A DNA stretch of 64,000 bases from NCBI GenBank assembly GCA_964106645.2, contig OZ067043.1; one strand, given 5' to 3'. The position numbers were made by a program, and so were the translations under genes. Below are positions 17,815-45,492 of the stretch, one piece after another. The first letter of the stretch is position 1; each line of letters opens with the position of its first letter. The notes under the pieces are model-generated. The model ran no database searches and had not been told where the DNA came from. It was given only the letters and a program-made list of their open reading frames with translations. This DNA is from Podarcis pityusensis (Eukaryota).

Positions 17815-18249
17815 TGTCAGGGAACTGCTATCGGAGCTAGAGGCGGAGGGAAGGCTCCAGAGGGATGGCGGAGAGGGTCCCAGTAGGGAGAGAGGCAGCC
17901 CGTCCACTGGGGAAGGAAATCAGCGTAACACCAGTAGAGAAGGGGGGCAGATGGCGGAATCAGAGAGGAGGCTCCAAGACTCCTCGCCGGAGACCAGCCA
18001 AGAGAGTACGGGTCCTCCGCTGCCCACACCCTCCCTGTGCAGAAGGCTTCCGCGCAGGGAGTCTAGGCGGAGACTAGGCGTCAAGGAACTTTTGTGCTGG
18101 AAGAAGTTTAAGAAACGCCCACTGACGGATTCTGCCAGCGACTGAGACAGTCACGATGCTGGAGGCTGTTCAGTCAGAAAGGGTTTAACCAGGTAACCTC
18201 CCCAGCAGTGGCGGCAACTTACGCACGAGCAACCCCTAAATCCATTACA
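17815..18249 (+). mobile_element. solo LTR (435 bp) of a Gypsy family related to the element at 38438-43928
   Basis: Starts TGTCAGGGAACTGC (same as the full element's LTR) and ends ...CCATTACA. 5-bp TSD GTACT at 17810-17814 and 18250-18254. Open frame 17816-18145 is homologous to the Pol C-terminus. Confidence 0.93.
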
Positions 18250-37897: not shown

Positions 37898-38437
37898 AAC
37901 TGAAACAAAATATTATAACAACAGATGTTTCCCCTGCAGTAATAGTTTCCGGTCCTAAACTAAAAATAAAAGCTATTATGCCAGTAAATGAATATAAATT
38001 AAAAAATAATCTACTAAGGAATTTCCTTGCTTATCATGTTTCCATAAAATAAGTGAGATTATCTTCATGGTTATAACCGTATATCCATGATAATGATGTT
38101 TTCTCAGTTGCAGGAAAGTGTATTCTAATTTTCATTAGGGAGTCTCTATGAAAATTAATTTCTAGGTTGAAAAATATAGGATGGCCTACTAAGTATGGGA
38201 AATTCTGCTCATACTTTTCAGGTTCATGTAATTATTATTACTATGGTTTATTGTAAAAAAAATAAAAAAATACAGTGCCCCCCATGTAATTTTGAATCAC
38301 ATAAATTAAACTTGTGTACCCCACCTCACCCCCGAGTTCAAATATAAACCTCCCAGAGATTGGGAAGGGTATTCACATTAATCTACAGCAGTAGAAAATA
38401 GTAGATAACCACAGTAGGTACCACTGCAGTGGGAAGG

Positions 38438-38845
38438 TGAGATGGGACGATGAGCTGCTTGTGTGTAAAATCCTAGTCCCTCAGAGTTTGGTCAAGTTTG
38501 CAAACCTCTGTCTGTAACGGAGCCCCTTAAACATGGCTCCGTCAGTCGCTGGCAGATTCCGACAGTGGTTGCTTTCGGAATCGCTTCCAACATAAAAGCT
38601 CCTTAACGGAAACACGTCTTCTGGACTCTCTGCGTGACAGTTTCCGGCGAGGAGTGGGTGTCCCTACAGGAGGTCCTGAAACCTCCCCACTGTTTTCGCT
38701 GGAAGTGTCTCTGAGCCATCCCTCCAGCTCACTTTCCCTCAGCTCAGCTCCTCTCCCCCTACTGGTTCCCTCTTCAGCTGCTGAGTCTCTCCCAACCTGT
38801 GTGAGCCCTTTCACTTCCCTTCCTTCCGATGGCAGTTCCCTGACA
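38438..38845 (-). repeat. 3' LTR
   Basis: Identical to 43521-43928 except C38827 versus T43910. Confidence 0.97.
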
Positions 38846-41800
38846 TCCACCTCCCCTCCAGGGCCCCCTTCATCCCCTCTCGCCCCCTCCTCTACGGGCG
38901 GTGAGGAGGCAAAACCCCGGAATGAACTTCCTTCATCTTCCGATGTCCCGAACACTTCTCTCCACCTGTTGCGGTTCCTGGTCTCGAAGTACTCCTCCTC
39001 CTCAGAGTCCATCTCCCCTTCCCCTTCCGAGTCCGAGAATCCTTCCAACTCCTCCTCCTCATCGGTGGTCCCAAAGTATTCCCTCCGGAACCTCTCCACA
39101 GGCTGAGGTTTCCTTGGGAACCTTTGATGGAACGTTTCTATCAATACCTCGTCATTGATATCTTCTGCCATTACCCAAGTGTTTTCTGACTCCGGTTCTC
39201 CTTCCCACGCTACCAAATACTCCACCTGATCCCCCTTCCACCTGGCGTCGAGGATTTCTGCCACATGGCTGCTGCATTCCCTTTCTTCTATGACCGGTCC
39301 CCGAGTGGCCATCCCTTCTCGTCCCCCCTCATACGGTGACAGTAACGACCTGTGAAATACTGGGTGCAGTTTCATGTGGTTGGGTAACCGGAGCCTGAAA
39401 GCCACTGGGTTGACCTGTTGAATGACCTCAAAGGGACCCAATCTCCTGGGTCTTAATTTCTTACAACCTCCTTTGAACGGCAACCCTTGGGTTGACAGCC
39501 ACACCCTATCTCCCACCCTTATGGTTTCACCTTCCCTTCGGTTCTTGTCTGCCTGCCTCTTGTATTCTTCCTTCGCCCTTTCTAAGTTGAGTTGGAGCTG
39601 ACGATGGATTGCTTCCATTTCTTCTACAAAATGCTCGGCTGCCGGGACGCTCCATCTCTCCCCTTCTCCCCCTGGGAAACCCCTGGGATGACACCCATAA
39701 TTAGCCAAGAAGGGGCTCATCCCTGTGGACACATTCTCGGCATTGTTGTAGGCAAATTCCGCCAGCGCCAACTTTTCTACCCAGTCATTCTCTCTGTCAT
39801 TGACATAACACCTCAGGTATTGCTGGAGGACACCGTTTGCTCTTTCCGCCTGCCCGTTGGTTTCAGGGTGCCGGGCAGTCGAAAAGTTGACCTCCACCTG
39901 CAGTAAGCTCATGAGCTTCCTCCAGAACCTGGAAGTAAATTGTTTTCCTCGGTCTGAGACCACCCTCAATGGCACCCCGTGCAACCTAAAAATGTGTTCT
40001 ACAAATAACTTCGCTGTCTCTTCCGCCGTGACTGCATGCGAGCAGGCTACAAAGTGGCACATCTTTGTTAGTAGGTCTACCACCACCATGATGGCTGTTT
40101 TCCCCTTGGACTTCGGCAGATCAGTCATAAAATCTATCGACACTGCCTCCCAAGGTCGTTCTGGGGTTGGTAAGGGTTCTAATAGCCCCGCCGGTGCCCG
40201 CCTCTCCCCTTTGGCTCGCTGGCATTGCTCACACCCTCTTACATACTCCCGTACATCTTCCCTCACCTTAGGCCACCAAAATTCCCTGGTGACCAACCAC
40301 ATGGTTTTGTGTTGTCCAAAATGCCCCGCCGTGGGGCTGTCGTGCAACTGCTTGAGTACCCTCCCCCTTAAGTCTCCTTCAGGGATATACAGTGCCCCTT
40401 TGTAATACAAAGCTCCATTTCTTTCCTCGAAACCCCCTGGTTCCTCTCCCTCACCCCTAAGACCTCTGAGCTTATTCTGGGCGTATTCATCATTCTCTGT
40501 TTCCTCTACCAGTTCTCTTTGTCCCACCAATGCCGCCCCACACACCCAGCGGTCCTCTGGAATGACATGTCTCTCTTCGGGTGCTCCCTCCCCCTCCAAA
40601 TATTCAGGTTTGCGTGAGAGAGCGTCCGCCCTAATGTTCTCTGGGCCTGGCACGTAACAAATCTCAAAGTTAAATTTGGAGAACTCCTGGGCCCATCTCA
40701 CTTGCCGTTGGTTGAGCACTCGTGCCGTCCTCCAATACTCTAGGTTCTTGTGGTCAGTGCACACTTGCACCTTATGTTGTGCGCCAATTAGCAGGTGCCT
40801 CCATCTCCGGAACGCCTCATGAATGGCTAGTAGTTCTCGGTCATACACCGTGTAGTTCCTCTCGGATTTGTTCAGCTTTCGCGAAAAAAAGGCACACGGT
40901 CTCCACTCTGACTCCTCCTTCCCTGGCTGCAGAAGCACCGCCCCAATCGCTCTGTCTGATGCGTCAGTTTCCACTCTCATCGGTTTTTGTAAATCCACAT
41001 GCAGGAGTTGTTGTTCCGAGGCGAAGGCCCTTTTTAGTTCCTCAAATGCTCGCTCCGCCTCCTCAGTCCAAACGAACTTCTTCTTACTGCTGAGACAGTC
41101 CGTAATGGGCGCCGTCAGGTGGGCAAAGTTTCGGATGAACTTACGATAGAAGTTCCCAAATCCTAGGAACCTCTGCACATCCTTCCTTGTTTTGGGTGTT
41201 TTCCATTCCAGCACCGCCTGGACCTTGCCGGGATCCATGGCCAATCCCTTGTCTGACAGGCGATACCCCAGGAATTCCACCTCCTTGGTATGAAACTGAC
41301 ACTTCTCCAGTTTCACCCACAGCTGGTTGGCTTGCAGCCTGCTCAACACTTCTCTGACGTCTCTCACATGCTGCTCCTCATTCTCAGAATACACCAACAC
41401 GTCGTCTAAGAAGGCCACACAATTCTTGTAAAGCAAAGGCCCCAGGACGTGGTTCATAAACGATTGAAAGCACGCGGAGCCTCCTTGTAGGCCGAAGGGC
41501 ATAACTAAATATTCAAATGCCCCCAAAGGGGTGAACATGGTGGTTTTCCATTCATCCCCCTTCCTTATTCGTATCAGGTTGTACGCCCCCCTTAGGTCCA
41601 GTTTAGTAAAAATCTTTCCCTTCCTGACCCTTGTCAAAATGTCGTCAATCCTGGGCATAGGGAAAGCCACTGGTTCTGACACTGCATTTAAGGCCCTGAA
41701 GTCACACACAAGCCTCGGCTTGTTCGTGTTTTTTTTATCCACAAAAAACACTGGGCTGCCCCCCACCGCCCTGGACTCTCTGATGAACCCTCTCTTCAGG

Positions 41801-42633
41801 TTCTTGTCAATGAACTCTCTTAGCTCCTGCATCTCTCTGTCTGACATGGCGTACAGCTTGCCTACAGGGAGCTGTGCCCCAGGGAGTAAATTGATTTGAC
41901 AGTCAAAGGGTCTATGCGGGGGTAGTTGGTCAGCTTCCCTTTCGCTGAAGACGTCGCGGAGATCTGCGTATTGTCGTGGTACCTTCACGTTCTCCGTTAC
42001 TTCAGTCCCTGCTAGGGTGGCTTGGGCCCCTGCCAAACCCTTTCCCTCTTTGCAGTGTTCTAAGCAATGTGCTGAACCAAAAGAAACCACTCTCTGATGC
42101 CAGCCCACCAGCGGATCATGTAACGCTAGCCAGCTCATCCCCAATATAATGGGAGCTCCTCCCAAGGTGGCCACATTAAACGCTATCAGTTCTGTGTGCC
42201 TTGCCACCTTCATTATCATTGGGACGGTCTGCAAGCTGACTTCTCCTCCCAACAGCTCCCTGCCATCGATCGTGGTCACCTGCAGGGGGTTGCTTAAAGG
42301 GATCGTCTGTATCTGGTGTTCAGCTGCAAACTCTTTGCTCATGAAATTGCAGGAGCTGCCTGAGTCCAACAGCGCCTTTATCTTTAGAGGGTGTCCGTTT
42401 GGCAGCTCTAGCGCCACTTCTATCACTAGGGCGGGTTTAGGAGGTTCTGGCGTGGGCACTTTCACTGCTCTTTGGCCTGGCTGCTGTGCCCCGACGGTGG
42501 CAGCCAGGCGTTGGCTTTTACTTGCTTCGGTATTTCTTCCTCTCTTCCCTCCACAGCTCCTACCATCCCTTGCCATTCCTTCCTCTGGGGGCAGACTCTG
42601 GCAAAGTGACCTGGCTGTTGGCAGAGATAGCAT
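38542..42633 (-). CDS. pol: Pol polyprotein (protease, reverse transcriptase, RNase H, integrase, chromodomain, acidic/basic C-terminal tail), probably expressed as Gag-Pol by -1 frameshift near 42520
   Basis: Protease LLDSGSSCNF; RT LDLRGAY, MPFGL and FLDD; RNase H TDASD; integrase HDSPTAGH..CEQC zinc finger and IDF/SDRG/AER DDE; GPF motif; chromodomain YLVAW..ENTW. 1363 codons without a stop. Confidence 0.97.
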   Translation of the reverse strand: MLSLPTARSLCQSLPPEEGMARDGRSCGGKRGRNTEASKSQRLAATVGAQQPGQRAVKVPTPEPPKPALVIEVALELPNGHPLKIKALLDSGSSCNFMSKEFAAEHQIQTIPLSNPLQVTTIDGRELLGGEVSLQTVPMIMKVARHTELIAFNVATLGGAPIILGMSWLALHDPLVGWHQRVVSFGSAHCLEHCKEGKGLAGAQATLAGTEVTENVKVPRQYADLRDVFSEREADQLPPHRPFDCQINLLPGAQLPVGKLYAMSDREMQELREFIDKNLKRGFIRESRAVGGSPVFFVDKKNTNKPRLVCDFRALNAVSEPVAFPMPRIDDILTRVRKGKIFTKLDLRGAYNLIRIRKGDEWKTTMFTPLGAFEYLVMPFGLQGGSACFQSFMNHVLGPLLYKNCVAFLDDVLVYSENEEQHVRDVREVLSRLQANQLWVKLEKCQFHTKEVEFLGYRLSDKGLAMDPGKVQAVLEWKTPKTRKDVQRFLGFGNFYRKFIRNFAHLTAPITDCLSSKKKFVWTEEAERAFEELKRAFASEQQLLHVDLQKPMRVETDASDRAIGAVLLQPGKEESEWRPCAFFSRKLNKSERNYTVYDRELLAIHEAFRRWRHLLIGAQHKVQVCTDHKNLEYWRTARVLNQRQVRWAQEFSKFNFEICYVPGPENIRADALSRKPEYLEGEGAPEERHVIPEDRWVCGAALVGQRELVEETENDEYAQNKLRGLRGEGEEPGGFEERNGALYYKGALYIPEGDLRGRVLKQLHDSPTAGHFGQHKTMWLVTREFWWPKVREDVREYVRGCEQCQRAKGERRAPAGLLEPLPTPERPWEAVSIDFMTDLPKSKGKTAIMVVVDLLTKMCHFVACSHAVTAEETAKLFVEHIFRLHGVPLRVVSDRGKQFTSRFWRKLMSLLQVEVNFSTARHPETNGQAERANGVLQQYLRCYVNDRENDWVEKLALAEFAYNNAENVSTGMSPFLANYGCHPRGFPGGEGERWSVPAAEHFVEEMEAIHRQLQLNLERAKEEYKRQADKNRREGETIRVGDRVWLSTQGLPFKGGCKKLRPRRLGPFEVIQQVNPVAFRLRLPNHMKLHPVFHRSLLSPYEGGREGMATRGPVIEERECSSHVAEILDARWKGDQVEYLVAWEGEPESENTWVMAEDINDEVLIETFHQRFPRKPQPVERFRREYFGTTDEEEELEGFSDSEGEGEMDSEEEEYFETRNRNRWREVFGTSEDEGSSFRGFASSPPVEEGARGDEGGPGGEVDVRELPSEGREVKGLTQVGRDSAAEEGTSRGRGAELRESELEGWLRDTSSENSGEVSGPPVGTPTPRRKLSRRESRRRVSVKELLCWKRFRKQPLSESASD
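38846..38859 (-). promoter_or_regulatory. polypurine tract (PPT)
   Basis: Minus-strand GGAGGGGAGGTGGA directly abuts the TG of the 3' LTR. Confidence 0.85.
42454..42522 (-). promoter_or_regulatory. putative -1 ribosomal frameshift signal (slippery site plus H-type pseudoknot)
   Basis: pol is in the -1 frame relative to gag. A_GUA_AAA, a 6-nt spacer, 10-bp stem 1 GCCUGGCUGC/GCAGCCAGGC, and loop GGGCAC pairing with downstream GUGCCC. Confidence 0.7.
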
Positions 42634-43475
42634 TTCCGGGCGCCTTTTCCCTCCTTCTTTCCCCCCTCACTGGGCTTTGAAACTGCGCGCGCGCGCGCTG
42701 TTCCGATTTCCATCGGCTCTGCCGGCGGGAAAGTTGGCTCTGGAATGTCTGGAATGCGGAACTCCTTCCAACGTTCCCCCTTCCCTTCCCGCCTCTCCAA
42801 TGCTCTCGCCTCCTGGCGCGCTCCTATGGTCAGCGCTGATTTGGTCAGCTGGTCCATAGACTCCGCCCTGGGCGCCCGGGAAAGTTCGTCTTTCACAGCC
42901 GAAGAAAGCCCTTCTTCAAAGAGCATTTGAATGGGTTCCGCCGATAGATCCCACCCCAATTTATGGATCAACATGGTGAACTCAGTCCAGTACTCACGGA
43001 CAGATCGGCTCCCCTGTTTGCAAGCCATTAACTGTCTGCGGACCACTCCCTGTTCAATATCGCTGGAAAACATCAGATCCATGGCGCGAAAGAACTTCAT
43101 CGTGTCCTTTAGGACGTCACTATTCGCTGCCATCAGGGGTCTAACCCAGTCTCTCGCCCCCTTTTCAAGATGCCCAATCACGAAAGCCACTCGTGATTCC
43201 TCGTCAGGGAATTCATCAAACTGCAGATTGAGGGCATATTGCATCTCTGTCCGAAAGCCATGATAGTCTTTGGGCTCCCCCCCAAACTTCTGCACCAATC
43301 CTGGTACCTTTCTGACGAGCTGGGTGTCTTTCCCCTTTTTGTCTGCATCCTGAGCCCTCCTCTCCTCGAGCCTCGCCGTCTGCAGCGCTAGCTGGACCTC
43401 CAACACCCGGTACCTTTCTTCCAGGCTTAGACCCGCTCCAGCTCCTGCTTCTCCGGTTCCGGCTGGGTTGCTCAT
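42462..43475 (-). CDS. gag: Gag (retrotransposon capsid domain plus CCHC zinc knuckle), PEG10/sushi-like
   Basis: 337-aa ORF starting 45 nt after the 5' LTR. Contains KQGSRSVREY..EF (major homology region-like), EPMEIG and CYLCQQPGHFARVC (CX2CX4HX4C). Confidence 0.95.
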   Translation of the reverse strand: MSNPAGTGEAGAGAGLSLEERYRVLEVQLALQTARLEERRAQDADKKGKDTQLVRKVPGLVQKFGGEPKDYHGFRTEMQYALNLQFDEFPDEESRVAFVIGHLEKGARDWVRPLMAANSDVLKDTMKFFRAMDLMFSSDIEQGVVRRQLMACKQGSRSVREYWTEFTMLIHKLGWDLSAEPIQMLFEEGLSSAVKDELSRAPRAESMDQLTKSALTIGARQEARALERREGKGERWKEFRIPDIPEPTFPPAEPMEIGTARARAVSKPSEGGKKEGKGARKCYLCQQPGHFARVCPQRKEWQGMVGAVEGREEEIPKQVKANAWLPPSGHSSQAKEQ

Positions 43476-43520: not shown

Positions 43521-43928
43521 TGAGATGGGACGATGAGCTGCTTGTGTGTAAAATCCTAGTCCCTCAGAGTTTGGTCAAGTTTGCAAACCTCTGTCTGTAA
43601 CGGAGCCCCTTAAACATGGCTCCGTCAGTCGCTGGCAGATTCCGACAGTGGTTGCTTTCGGAATCGCTTCCAACATAAAAGCTCCTTAACGGAAACACGT
43701 CTTCTGGACTCTCTGCGTGACAGTTTCCGGCGAGGAGTGGGTGTCCCTACAGGAGGTCCTGAAACCTCCCCACTGTTTTCGCTGGAAGTGTCTCTGAGCC
43801 ATCCCTCCAGCTCACTTTCCCTCAGCTCAGCTCCTCTCCCCCTACTGGTTCCCTCTTCAGCTGCTGAGTCTCTCCCAACCTGTGTGAGCCCTTTCACTTC
43901 CCTTCCTTCTGATGGCAGTTCCCTGACA
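43521..43928 (-). repeat. 5' LTR
   Basis: TGTCAGGGAACTGC...CCATCTCA, 408 bp, followed by the PBS and gag. Confidence 0.97.
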
Positions 43929-45492
43929 GAAGGTAAACAGCGTTTCCGTACACTGTGGTTTCTGTCGCGGTGTCCCGTTGCACCAGAAGTGGTTTAGTCA
44001 TGTTGGCCACATGATCTGGAAAGCTATCTGCAGACAAATGCCGGCTCCCTCAGCCTAAAAGCAGAGTTGAGCACCACACCCCATAGTTGAATTCGACTGG
44101 ACTTAATCAGCCGGGGTCCTTTACCCTTAACAGCAGTAGAAAGATGGTCTTTCAATAAAATATTTGTTTTTGCATTTGGCCAGAAATGCTAAAATCAGAA
44201 TCTCTATGGTAACATAGAAATTGTTGAGACTTGTAGGTGTATTTTCCATTTACTGGGCATTATACTAGGGGCGGAGAGCAGGCAGGGGCGTGGCTGGTGC
44301 ACATCCCGGGGGTGTGGCACGTCGCCCGCGGGGGCATGGCACCTAGCGTGGTGGGGGGGCACACAGCGTGTGTCTGGGGGGGGCAGTCACGATGGTACCC
44401 TGCTCCCTGATAGTGCTGGGGGCGGTGTGCTCCCCGCGCGCGCCCCCATTCCTCTGCCAATGGGCAGCAGTGATGTATCTTTAGCAAAGATCAGAACTAC
44501 CTCATACCTGTCAACTGCTCCAGAAAAAACGGGACATCTCATTTTTTTTTCTCACAAAAGGACAGTGGTCAAAGTGGCTGCCATGATTTTGCACGATTTT
44601 GGGCTGCACTTTTTTCAGGCATGGCACCCAAAAGCACACATTTTGGGGTGCTGCCCAAGATTGCTGCCCTGAAAAAAAGCATTTTGGGGGAGCAGCGATT
44701 TTGTGTAGCACCCCAAAACATTCATTTTTGGGTGCTGTGCCAGGAAAAATTTGCTGTGATTTGTGCAGGAGGGTTGATCTGGAAGATAGTGTCCTGGATA
44801 TGGGGGTGCATTGTATTGGAAGAGCCAAACTAGAAGTTACACAGGTCAGAAACTTTGGCCTTCCAGATGTCACTGGACTACAACTCCCATCATCTCTGAT
44901 AATTGACTGTGCCAGCTGGGGCTGATGGGAATTGGGAGTCCAATAATATCAGAAGTTCCGCACCTGTCTTACACTTAACATGTGGTTGCTACCAAAAATG
45001 GCTGCTTGTCTAGATTCCCCCTCCCTTTCCCTGTCTAACAGAACCCATCTGTGCCTAGATGGTTACAATGCTGTAGTTTGCTCTGATGCTGCTCTCCAAC
45101 ATTGACTGCTACTTATACTTATTGGGTAGGGGGAGTGCCACACTGAATGTCAATGTAAACTATGAAGCCTGCTAACATAAAACAATGGCGTGGGAGAATA
45201 AAGTGTGGAACAGAAGATGGACCACAGAGGTGTGAGGAAAGACATATGCAACATAAGCTCTTCTGGTTCTACCTCTGACTTCTGTGCATTCAGCAGAACC
45301 TCTGCATAGCACCTATGTGCACATAAGCTTTATGCATCTAGACTCTCTGCATAGTCAAGGACCCTGTTTTTTCCAGGGTGTACAAGCCCATATACATGCA
45401 AGATGAATGCGTGTAGTTTCACATCAGAGGTTCTGCTGCATTGATAGAGGTCAGAGCATAGGGCCGAAGCTTAGTGGTCCAGCATATACTCT

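What the first reader, a model, noticed from the sequence alone, without database searches (positions are those of the whole stretch)
38911..39090. Two TIM/IBM-like (F-x-G-F) motifs in the integrase tail: possible tethering to LEDGF or TFIIS-domain proteins
Seen: after the chromodomain come two similar acidic units, FRREYFGTTDEEEELEGF (39037-39090) and WREVFGTSEDEGSSFRGF (38911-38964), each with S/T residues in a CK2-like acidic context. Known: the TFIIS N-terminal domain interacting motif, also called the LEDGF integrase-binding-domain motif, of IWS1, POGZ, CDCA7L/JPO2 and MLL1 consists of a short helix ending in Phe, an acidic phosphorylatable linker and FxGF. Lentiviral integrase uses LEDGF for targeting through a different interface. 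Inference: this retrotransposon may mimic the host motif to dock on LEDGF/HDGFL2 or elongation factors and so steer integration. The first unit (LEGF) is a weaker match.
Basis: partly seen in the sequence, partly recalled or inferred. Interest (0 to 1): 0.85.

Follow-up and report, generated by a model that had tools for sequence, protein, structure and literature searches.

The report
LEDGF-type docking motifs in lizard retrotransposon integrase
A young, intact lizard Ty3/gypsy retrotransposon carries, behind its integrase chromodomain, two conserved short motifs that look like the peptides host proteins use to dock on the chromatin tethers LEDGF/HDGFL2, so it may choose integration sites by host mimicry; binding has not been tested.

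Summary
On the minus strand lies an intact chromovirus: LTRs 38438-38845 and 43521-43928 with one mismatch, a 5-bp target-site duplication, gag, and a 1363-aa pol. Its integrase tail holds FRREYFGTTDEEEELEGF (39037-39090) and WREVFGTSEDEGSSFRGF (38911-38964).

The units are more than chance. All carriers form one strongly supported clade of lacertid-lizard chromoviruses (100/100), including families only 29-37% identical to this copy over chromodomain and tail. In a nine-sequence tail alignment, six columns are invariant; five are the motif-defining W, F and F-x-G-F of unit 2. Synonymous sites are saturated while these residues hold, sometimes through different codons.

The layout is a predicted short helix ending in Phe, an 8-9-residue acidic S/T/G linker, then FxGF in a disordered tail. 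This fits the published definition of TND-interacting / IBD-binding motifs and resembles the validated DPF3a peptide. Unit 1 here is a derived LEGF; sister lineages have FxGF. The chromodomain keeps one of three aromatic-cage residues.

Binding to LEDGF/HDGFL2 and any integration bias remain untested, because no TND sequence was available to the tools. No precedent was found in the held literature.

The parts
43929..43933 (-). Target-site duplication CCTTC, upstream copy
   Evidence: Read directly. Identical 5-mer flanks the 3' LTR.
43521..43928 (-). 5' LTR (408 bp, TG...CA)
   Evidence: LTR-LTR alignment shows one mismatch. Direct repeat found. Ends read.
42462..43475 (-). gag ORF (337 aa)
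   Evidence: Pfam Retrotrans_gag, Ty3_capsid and zf-CCHC.
38542..42633 (-). pol ORF (1363 aa): PR-RT-RNaseH-IN(H2C2, rve, SH3_Tf2-1)-chromodomain-tail. It overlaps gag in another frame.
39121..39264 (-). Chromodomain (pol aa 1124-1171). Only one of the three HP1 aromatic-cage residues (the Trp) is kept.
   Evidence: Pfam PF00385, E=7e-10. Alignment to Drosophila HP1 1KNA shows Tyr->Ser/His, Trp kept and Tyr->Glu. The AF2 fold is confident.
39073..39099 (-). Unit 1 helix VERFRREYF (aa 1179-1187)
   Evidence: AF2 helix at model residues 58-66. The aromatic-x3-hydrophobic-Phe pattern is kept in relatives.
39049..39072 (-). Unit 1 linker GTTDEEEE (8 aa, CK2-type T1189/T1190)
   Evidence: The 8-16-residue linker criterion comes from PMC9987994.
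39037..39048 (-). Unit 1 LEGF (aa 1196-1199), a derived variant of FxGF
   Evidence: Own family has LEGF/MEGF. Sister lineages have FVGF, FEGF, FKGF or FQGF. This copy is one codon shorter than L001 here.
38950..38964 (-). Unit 2 helix part WREVF (aa 1224-1228)
   Evidence: AF2 short helix at model residues 104-107, at low pLDDT. W and F are invariant in A4.
38923..38949 (-). Unit 2 linker GTSEDEGSS (9 aa, CK2-type T1230/S1231, with Ser at -2 and Glu at -4 from FxGF)
   Evidence: The consensus comes from PMC8022399 and PMC7337902.
38911..38922 (-). Unit 2 FRGF (aa 1238-1241)
   Evidence: F, G and F are invariant across 9 sequences down to 29% identity. Relatives encode them with different synonymous codons. 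No frequent variant was listed at these codons in contigs of 4 runs.
38846..38893 (-). Purine-rich tract / PPT abutting the 3' LTR, translated as EEGARGDEGGPGGEVD
   Evidence: Read. The conserved block EGGPGGEVDVREL coincides with the PPT and LTR terminus, so it carries nucleotide-level constraint, unlike the two units.
38438..38845 (-). 3' LTR. The last ~100 pol codons (to the stop at 38542) are LTR-encoded.
38433..38437 (-). Target-site duplication CCTTC, downstream copy

Best explanation
The two units are genuine short linear motifs under purifying selection in the disordered C-terminal tail of a chromoviral integrase. Each has a short amphipathic helix ending in Phe, an 8-9-residue acidic, CK2-phosphorylatable linker, and an FxGF-type turn; unit 2 has FRGF and unit 1 a weakened LEGF. 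This is the architecture cellular proteins (KMT2A, IWS1, JPO2, POGZ, ASK, DPF3a) use to dock on the TFIIS-N-terminal-type domain (the IBD) of the H3K36me readers LEDGF/PSIP1 and HRP2/HDGFL2. Most likely mechanism, inferred: integrase in the pre-integration complex presents one or two such motifs to the host's LEDGF/HDGFL2 IBD. Its PWWP domain then tethers the complex to H3K36-methylated transcribed chromatin. CK2 phosphorylation of the linker may strengthen the contact. The chromodomain, with its degenerate methyl-lysine cage, probably contributes little canonical H3K9me reading. Shown here: the motif exists, is clade-wide, is constrained at the amino-acid level, and fits the published motif definition. 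Inferred: the partner, the phospho-switch, and any effect on integration sites.
For: 1) Element and motif.
2) Conservation: the helix-linker-FxGF unit follows the chromodomain in every retrieved lineage of one clade. These are the window's own family (P0001-3); P0004, P0061, P0186 and P0190; P0195; P0005 (unit 2 only); and P0009, P0154, P0155, P0188, P0189 and P0191 (DFFDDWLF-TPTLSAST-FQGF).
3) In alignment A4 (identity down to 29%), six tail columns are invariant, and five of them are W, F, F, G, F of unit 2.
4) A tree on SH3+chromodomain puts all true carriers in one clade with 100/100 support and deep internal branches of 0.23-0.74.
5) Protein-level selection: between the window and L001, pS is 0.69-0.79 (saturated) against pN 0.20-0.24 in the tail and units. 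The conserved F/G/F use different synonymous codons in L001 and L002.
6) The regex [DE].[DEST].F.GF hits 14 times in 216,300 aa of retrieved proteins, against 0.64 expected. Ten hits are in these tails.
7) AF2 predicts helices exactly at VERFRREYF and REVF and disorder elsewhere.
8) Literature: the TIM is defined as helix + 8-16-aa acidic/G/S/T linker + FxGF, with FxGF present in all known LEDGF/HRP2 partners and CK2 phosphorylation enhancing binding (PMC9987994). The consensus is D/ExExFxGF (PMC8022399) or S/ExFxGF. The DPF3a peptide LFGSTSESDTSTFHGFDEDD binds the HRP2 IBD directly, and F>A mutations abolish binding (PMC7337902). Compare unit 2, VFGTSEDEGSSFRGF. The FxGF-LEDGF-domain contact is conserved as far as Drosophila JIL-1/JASPer (PMC6877644).
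9) The chromodomain cage is degenerate.
Against: No binding or docking test was possible, because no TND/IBD sequence could be obtained through the tools. No insertion-site data exist; the window holds one full copy and one solo LTR in AT-rich sequence with no recognisable gene. The motif is short, and acidic-aromatic peptides bind many partners. Unit 1 of this copy has Leu in place of the first Phe. The P0009 family has a Ser/Thr-rich rather than acidic linker. Named carriers come from Podarcis only, plus two contigs of unknown host, so the phylogenetic sample is narrow. FxGF is absent from the Anolis sister group. The unit 2 helix is only 4 residues at low pLDDT. PDB sequence search and Atlas feature search of the tail were uninformative.
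Confidence: 0.45

Rival explanations
1. The units are real, selected docking motifs, but for a partner other than a TND/IBD. Candidates include histone H2A-H2B or H3-H4 (acidic stretch with aromatic anchor, as in histone chaperones), an acidic-activation-domain receptor (Mediator or TFIIH-type), or a transport or adaptor domain that reads acidic Phe-Gly peptides.
For: The tail is strongly acidic: 36 E and 9 D in 192 aa. It has aromatic residues between the units as well (EEEEYFE, SDWE). Conservation and selection show function but do not identify the partner.
Against: Generic acidic-aromatic binders do not need an invariant Gly in F-x-G-F or a fixed 8-10-residue spacing from a helix-terminal Phe, and both are kept across the clade. 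The acidic spacer between the units varies freely in length and sequence. The match to the IBM consensus and the DPF3a peptide is specific.
Confidence: 0.3
2. The units act within the element itself. They could be acidic/aromatic segments that fold back on the basic LTR-encoded C-terminus (RRKLSRRESRRR...) or on the SH3/chromodomain. Alternatively they could mediate integrase multimerisation or regulated processing, rather than host tethering.
For: An acidic region is followed by a conserved basic C-terminus that is also under purifying selection (pN 0.28 against pS 0.74). Duplicated units could bridge subunits.
Against: AF2 gives no confident contact of the tail with the chromodomain; pLDDT is below 50 and the tail is extended. 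P0005 keeps only unit 2 and the P0009 family mainly unit 1, which fits an independent SLiM better than a fixed intramolecular structure. The resemblance to a host motif would be left unexplained.
Confidence: 0.12
3. There is no protein function. The similarity among copies would reflect recent common descent or nucleotide-level constraint (PPT, LTR end, RNA structure), and the resemblance to FxGF motifs would be chance in an acidic low-complexity tail.
For: The shuffle probability of one acidic FxGF is only about 2%, unremarkable for a post-hoc observation. The neighbouring conserved block EGGPGGEVDVREL is explained by the PPT and LTR terminus.
Against: Synonymous sites in the units are saturated while the residues are kept, and the same F/G/F are encoded by different codons. 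The motif-defining positions account for five of the six invariant tail columns at 29-50% identity. The motif persists across internal branches summing to more than one substitution per site. It lies 15 nt or more upstream of the purine tract.
Confidence: 0.05

Closest known systems
Cellular TND-interacting / IBD-binding motifs (TIM/IBM) of KMT2A, IWS1, JPO2/CDCA7L, POGZ, ASK, MED1 and especially DPF3a
   Same: Disordered context, a short helix with an anchoring Phe, an 8-16-residue acidic S/T/G linker with CK2 sites, and FxGF. Tandem motifs occur in one protein, as in JPO2, SPT6, LEO1 and IWS1. Unit 2 (VFGTSEDEGSSFRGF) parallels the HRP2-binding DPF3a peptide LFGSTSESDTSTFHGF, with Ser at -2 as in DPF3a and ASK.
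   Different: It is carried by a retrotransposon integrase, not a host transcription regulator. Binding is untested. Unit 1 of this copy has LEGF.
HIV-1 (lentiviral) integrase-LEDGF/p75 tethering
   Same: The proposed outcome is the same: the integrase is docked on the LEDGF IBD, whose PWWP domain reads H3K36me chromatin. The HIV IN site on the IBD overlaps that of the KMT2A FxGF motif (PMC8022399).
   Different: From general knowledge, lentiviral IN binds through the folded catalytic-core dimer interface, not a linear FxGF motif. Here the contact would be by mimicry of cellular partners, in a Ty3/gypsy element.
Integrase C-terminal tail tethers: MLV IN-BET ET domain, Ty1 IN-AC40, Ty5 IN-Sir4
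   Same: A short peptide in the disordered C-terminus of integrase binds a host chromatin or transcription factor and sets target choice (PMC7459421 for Ty1 and PMC4121521 for MLV, both listed). From general knowledge, Ty5 targeting is phospho-regulated.
   Different: The motif and presumed partner are different. None of these uses an FxGF/TND interface.
Chromoviruses with a functional chromodomain (e.g. MAGGY, Tf1/sushi group) and plant group II chromodomains
   Same: Same element class and the same position of the chromodomain at the IN C-terminus.
   Different: In this clade the aromatic cage is reduced to one Trp, which is itself lost in the P0009 family. A long motif-bearing tail follows the chromodomain. 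Most fish and amphibian relatives instead have basic RGRGRPRR-type tails.
Drosophila JIL-1 DFxGFDE motif binding the LEDGF domain of JASPer
   Same: It shows that the FxGF-LEDGF-domain contact is ancient and portable across animals (PMC6877644).
   Different: The carrier is a host kinase, not a mobile element.

Membership tests
TIM / IBM (TND-interacting, LEDGF/HRP2 IBD-binding motif) | Lies in an intrinsically disordered region | tested here: met
   In the AF2 model, residues 68-105, 108-110, 119-123 and 125-132 have pLDDT below 50 with no tertiary contacts.
TIM / IBM (TND-interacting, LEDGF/HRP2 IBD-binding motif) | Obligate short alpha-helix presenting conserved Phe/Val/Leu/Ile | tested here: met
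   Predicted helices at VERFRREYF (aa 1179-1187) and REVF (aa 1225-1228), the latter short and at low pLDDT. The aromatic and terminal Phe are invariant. This is prediction only.
TIM / IBM (TND-interacting, LEDGF/HRP2 IBD-binding motif) | Flexible acidic linker of 8-16 residues rich in D/E, G, S/T | tested here: met
   The linkers are GTTDEEEE (8 aa) and GTSEDEGSS (9 aa); relatives have 8-10. The criterion comes from PMC9987994. The P0009 family linker is S/T-rich but not acidic.
TIM / IBM (TND-interacting, LEDGF/HRP2 IBD-binding motif) | FxGF, present in all known LEDGF/HRP2 partners, with consensus D/E-x-E/S-x-F-x-G-F | tested here: met
   Unit 2 is E-G-S-S-F-R-G-F, which matches, and F, G, F are invariant. 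Unit 1 in this copy is LEGF and does not match strictly, but sister lineages have EDFVGF, ESFEGF or EDFKGF.
TIM / IBM (TND-interacting, LEDGF/HRP2 IBD-binding motif) | CK2 phosphorylation of the linker that raises affinity | not testable with these tools
   Only consensus sites (S/T-x-x-D/E at T1189, T1190, T1230, S1231, S1200, S1202) can be read from the sequence.
TIM / IBM (TND-interacting, LEDGF/HRP2 IBD-binding motif) | Direct, Phe-dependent binding to a TND/IBD | not testable with these tools
   No TND/IBD sequence was obtainable from the window, search results or the allowed references. PDB sequence search of the tail was blank.
Chromovirus (Ty3/gypsy LTR retrotransposon, Metaviridae) | gag, then pol with PR-RT-RNaseH-IN and a chromodomain at the IN C-terminus | tested here: met
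   Pfam hits in that order.
Chromovirus (Ty3/gypsy LTR retrotransposon, Metaviridae) | Flanking LTRs (TG...CA) with a target-site duplication | tested here: met
   408-bp LTRs with one mismatch and a 5-bp TSD, CCTTC.
HP1-type methyl-lysine-reading chromodomain | Three-residue aromatic cage (Drosophila HP1 Tyr24, Trp45, Tyr48) | tested here: not met
   Alignment to 1KNA shows Ser/His, Trp and Glu at the three positions. In the P0009 family the Trp is Arg.

The most novel reading that the evidence does not exclude
A clade of lizard chromoviruses has let the methyl-lysine cage of its chromodomain decay. It has instead acquired a tandem, CK2-switchable copy of the host's own IBD-binding motif, through which its integrase docks on LEDGF/HDGFL2. 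This would be the first natural non-lentiviral retroelement to use the LEDGF pathway. It would do so by mimicking cellular partners rather than through the lentiviral catalytic-core interface, giving HIV-like targeting of transcribed gene bodies in a vertebrate germ line.
Probability: 0.35. Interest if true: 0.85.

Novelty: new variant of a known kind. Interest (0 to 1): 0.7.

Why it matters
Retroelement integrases choose targets by tethering to host factors, and each known tether (LEDGF for lentiviruses, BET for gammaretroviruses, Pol III factors or Sir4 for yeast Ty elements) has informed both virology and vector design. A Ty3/gypsy element that copies the host's own LEDGF/HDGFL2-binding peptide would be convergent evolution onto the LEDGF pathway through a different interface. 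It would extend TND-TIM biology to mobile elements. It would also offer a natural, compact, possibly phospho-switchable targeting peptide. The contrast with the basic, AT-hook-like tails of related fish and amphibian elements suggests that the post-chromodomain tail is an exchangeable targeting module. The idea is directly testable with peptides and with insertion-site statistics in the many sequenced Podarcis genomes.

Tried and rejected
1) PDB sequence search with the 87-aa tail at E<=10 gave no hit. This is expected for a short linear motif and is uninformative.
2) ESM Atlas feature search of tail aa 1172-1262 gave best scores of 0.77-0.79, below the useful range.
3) The look-up of encoding contigs for P0003 returned nothing on record, so dN/dS within the window's own family could not be computed. 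L001 and L002 were used instead.
4) Three primary TIM/IBM papers are not held: PMC6065015, PMC8943916 and Tesina 2015. Definitions were taken from the review PMC9987994 and from PMC7337902 and PMC8022399.
5) Complex prediction was not run. It needs a TND/IBD chain, and none is in the window or in any search result; the reference option covers only bacteria, archaea and phages.
6) Expression is not established. No run on record as RNA holds the stretch. Contigs of a run guessed to be RNA (X15) cover 38994-39300 with 7 differences, but that run may be DNA.
7) Insertion context is uninformative. Flanking ORFs of 150 aa or more have no Pfam family, and the flanks are 36-47% GC non-coding DNA.
8) The Anolis 'TDEEENLGF' was considered as a homologous unit and rejected as an FxGF match, because Asn sits at the first Phe position.
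9) P0149's 'LPGF' in a basic tail is a chance regex hit outside the clade.
10) The antisense ORFs 38654-39106 and 38901-39158 lie opposite the GA-rich coding tail and are taken as compositional artefacts.
Full report
**1. What is at the site**

The stretch lies in a 1363-aa minus-strand ORF, 38542-42633. Pfam finds, in order, retroviral protease, RVT_1, RNase H, integrase H2C2 zinc finger, rve core, the Tf2-1-type SH3 domain, and a chromodomain at aa 1124-1171. An upstream overlapping ORF (42462-43475) is gag, with a Ty3-type capsid and a CCHC knuckle.

Two 408-bp LTRs (43521-43928 and 38438-38845, TG...CA) differ at one position. They are flanked by a 5-bp target-site duplication, CCTTC. This is therefore a young, apparently intact Ty3/gypsy chromovirus.

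The nearest database proteins are 'Gypsy retrotransposon integrase-like' entries from Podarcis muralis. Near-identical DNA occurs in contigs of runs under at least seven organism labels. The host is thus a lacertid lizard.

pol reads through the polypurine tract and about 100 codons into the 3' LTR.

**2. The observation**

Both units are present exactly as described. FRREYFGTTDEEEELEGF is aa 1182-1199 (39037-39090) and WREVFGTSEDEGSSFRGF is aa 1224-1241 (38911-38964). They are paralogous: aromatic-R-x-E-hydrophobic-F-G-T-[TS]-acidic...-[LF]-x-G-F. CK2-type acceptors (S/T-x-x-D/E) are T1189, T1190, T1230 and S1231, plus S1200 and S1202 after LEGF.

Shuffling the 192-aa tail yields an acidic FxGF in 1.9% of trials and two acidic [FL]xGF in 0.06%. 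On its own this is unimpressive for a post-hoc find, so I turned to conservation.

**3. Conservation**

A full HMMER scan of representative proteins with pol aa 994-1363 and two word-indexed searches gave 296 related proteins. I located the chromodomain end in each and read the tails. A helix-linker-FxGF unit directly behind the chromodomain occurs in the following.

- **The window's own family (P0001-3):** LEGF or MEGF, plus FRGF.
- **P0004 (a Logan contig, L001), P0061, P0186 and P0190:** ...RFWEEQF-[AG]TTD-acidic-F[VE]GF, plus ...W-E-x-V-F...SSFRGF.
- **P0195:** FKGF plus FLGF. The latter, in the context E-D-E-I-F-L-G-F, is a perfect ExExFxGF.
- **P0005 (an ENA metagenome contig, L002):** unit 1 is lost and unit 2 kept, as QWKTVFESDENEDTDFLGF.
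- **A second Podarcis family (P0009, P0154, P0155, P0188, P0189, P0191):** DFFDDWLF-TPTLSAST-FQGF-SSDEE. This family is 32-37% identical to the window over chromodomain and tail.

Unit 1's LEGF is therefore a derived state of FxGF. This copy is one codon shorter there than L001.

In alignment A4 (nine sequences, identity to the window down to 29%), six columns behind the chromodomain boundary are invariant. Five of them are W, F, F, G, F of unit 2; the sixth is a later Gly. The acidic spacer between the units varies in length and sequence.

The strict published pattern [DE].[DEST].F.GF hits 14 times in 216,300 residues, against 0.64 expected from composition. Ten hits are in these tails, and three are the structured RT 'EFLGF'.

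A maximum-likelihood tree on the SH3+chromodomain region puts all true carriers in one clade with 100/100 support. Of its 15 rows, 14 carry the motif; the exception, P0010, has a decayed tail. Internal branches are 0.23-0.74 substitutions per site. The Anolis group lies outside this clade and has no FxGF, only 'TDEEENLGF'. Crotalus, amphibian and fish relatives lack the motif, and most fish-type tails are basic, of the form RGRGRPRR.

**4. Selection is on the protein**

Between the window and L001, synonymous differences are saturated while non-synonymous ones are far lower. pS is 0.77 in the pre-LTR tail and 0.69 over both units. pN is 0.24 and 0.20 respectively.

The conserved Phe, Gly and Phe are written with different codons in the window, L001 and L002: TTC/TTT/TTC, GGT/GGG/GGG and TTT/TTC/TTT. 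The neighbouring conserved block EGGPGGEVDVREL does coincide with the PPT and the LTR terminus. The units, however, lie 15 nt or more upstream of that tract and show no nucleotide-level constraint.

Contigs from four runs list no frequent variant in the FRGF codons. The listed variants in unit 2 are third-position changes or match substitutions seen in relatives.

**5. Structure**

AlphaFold2 on alignment A3 folds the chromodomain confidently. It leaves the tail disordered (pLDDT below 50) except for a helix at VERFRREYF (aa 1179-1187) and a short one at REVF (aa 1225-1228). Each of these ends at the Phe that precedes the linker.

Aligned to Drosophila HP1 (1KNA), the chromodomain keeps only the Trp of the three aromatic-cage residues; the Tyr positions are Ser/His and Glu. 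In the P0009 family even the Trp is Arg. Canonical H3K9me reading is therefore unlikely in this clade.

**6. Comparison with the known motif**

The review PMC9987994 defines TIMs by three features:

- an obligate short helix anchoring through Phe/Val/Leu/Ile;
- a flexible 8-16-residue linker rich in D/E, G and S/T that CK2 phosphorylates to raise affinity;
- an optional FxGF, which is nevertheless present in all known LEDGF and HRP2 partners and essential for their interaction.

The review also notes that several proteins carry two or three TIMs. The consensus is given as D/ExExFxGF (PMC8022399) or S/ExFxGF (PMC7337902). The DPF3a peptide LFGSTSESDTSTFHGFDEDD binds the HRP2 IBD directly. Binding is enhanced by phospho-Ser at -2 and abolished by F>A.

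Unit 2 here, VFGTSEDEGSSFRGF, has the same hydrophobic-F-G-[ST][ST] start, a 9-residue acidic/Ser linker, Glu at -4, Ser at -2, and FxGF. The FxGF-LEDGF-domain contact is conserved as far as Drosophila JIL-1/JASPer (PMC6877644). All sequence-testable membership criteria are met for unit 2. Unit 1 fails only the first Phe in this copy.

**7. Interpretation**

- **Shown:** a clade-wide, protein-level-constrained, duplicated SLiM with TIM/IBM architecture in a disordered integrase tail.
- **Inferred:** it docks integrase on the host LEDGF/HDGFL2 IBD and so tethers integration to H3K36-methylated transcribed chromatin, possibly tuned by CK2. I put this at about 0.45.
- **Rivals:** a different host partner, such as histones, an activation-domain receptor or an adaptor domain (0.30); an intramolecular or multimerisation role (0.12); and no function (0.05, largely excluded).

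**8. What could not be done**

No TND/IBD sequence is available from the window, the search results or the permitted references, so no complex prediction was run, and I did not type one from memory. Insertion-site bias cannot be judged from one window; the flanks are featureless AT-rich DNA. Expression is not established.

**9. Novelty**

Full-text searches found no paper combining FxGF, the IBD-binding motif or the TND-interacting motif with retrotransposons or retroelements in the sense proposed here. Tethering through a peptide in the integrase C-terminus is a known principle, as in MLV-BET, Ty1-AC40 and Ty5-Sir4. Lentiviruses use LEDGF through another interface. I therefore class this as a new variant of a known kind.

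That shows the element is multicopy but is not independent evidence.

Noticed in passing
window 38542-38845 (minus strand): The last ~100 codons of pol are encoded by the 3' LTR. This LTR-encoded, largely basic C-terminus (…RRKLSRRESRRRVSVKELLCWKRF…) is itself under purifying selection against L001 (pN 0.28, pS 0.74) and is conserved in P0001, P0003 and P0004.
   Followed up: partly
window 39121-39264 (minus strand): The chromodomain keeps only the Trp of the HP1 aromatic cage (Tyr->Ser/His, Tyr->Glu). In the P0009 family the Trp is Arg. Canonical methyl-lysine reading is unlikely in this clade.
   Followed up: partly
window 17930-18127 (plus strand): tblastn finds a 56%-identical match to pol aa 1290-1358, the LTR-encoded tail. 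It is a diverged solo LTR of a related family with the frame still open over 69 codons.
   Followed up: no
window 38846-38893 and the LTR start at 38845: The highly conserved peptide block EGGPGGEVDVRELPSE is encoded by the polypurine tract and the LTR's terminal TGTCAGGGAACTG. Its conservation probably reflects cis-acting DNA/RNA constraint overlaid on coding.
   Followed up: partly
P0019-P0153 (related proteins): Most fish- and amphibian-type relatives carry a basic tail beginning HP[ND]RPAPRGRGRPRR (AT-hook-like) and often ending ...SPEY/F, in place of the acidic FxGF tail. The post-chromodomain tail looks like an exchangeable module.
   Followed up: no
P0196, P0198, P0202 (Anolis carolinensis): The Anolis sister group has a tail with 'VVTDEEENLGFPPF'. 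This recalls the T-D-E-E-E...x-G-F part of unit 1 but lacks the first Phe and the helix. It is either a remnant or an unrelated acidic stretch.
   Followed up: no
P0006 (NCBI XP_077774286.1): A Podarcis muralis gene model named 'vomeronasal type-2 receptor 26-like' contains integrase and SH3 domains of this element family (61-77% identity). It is probably a chimeric gene prediction across a TE insertion.
   Followed up: no
window 42462-42633: gag and pol overlap by 172 nt in different frames, implying a frameshift or another recoding route for pol. The site was not mapped.
   Followed up: no
window 38654-39106 and 38901-39158 (plus strand): Long antisense ORFs (150 and 85 aa) lie opposite the GA-rich tail-coding region. 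They are most likely a by-product of composition.
   Followed up: no
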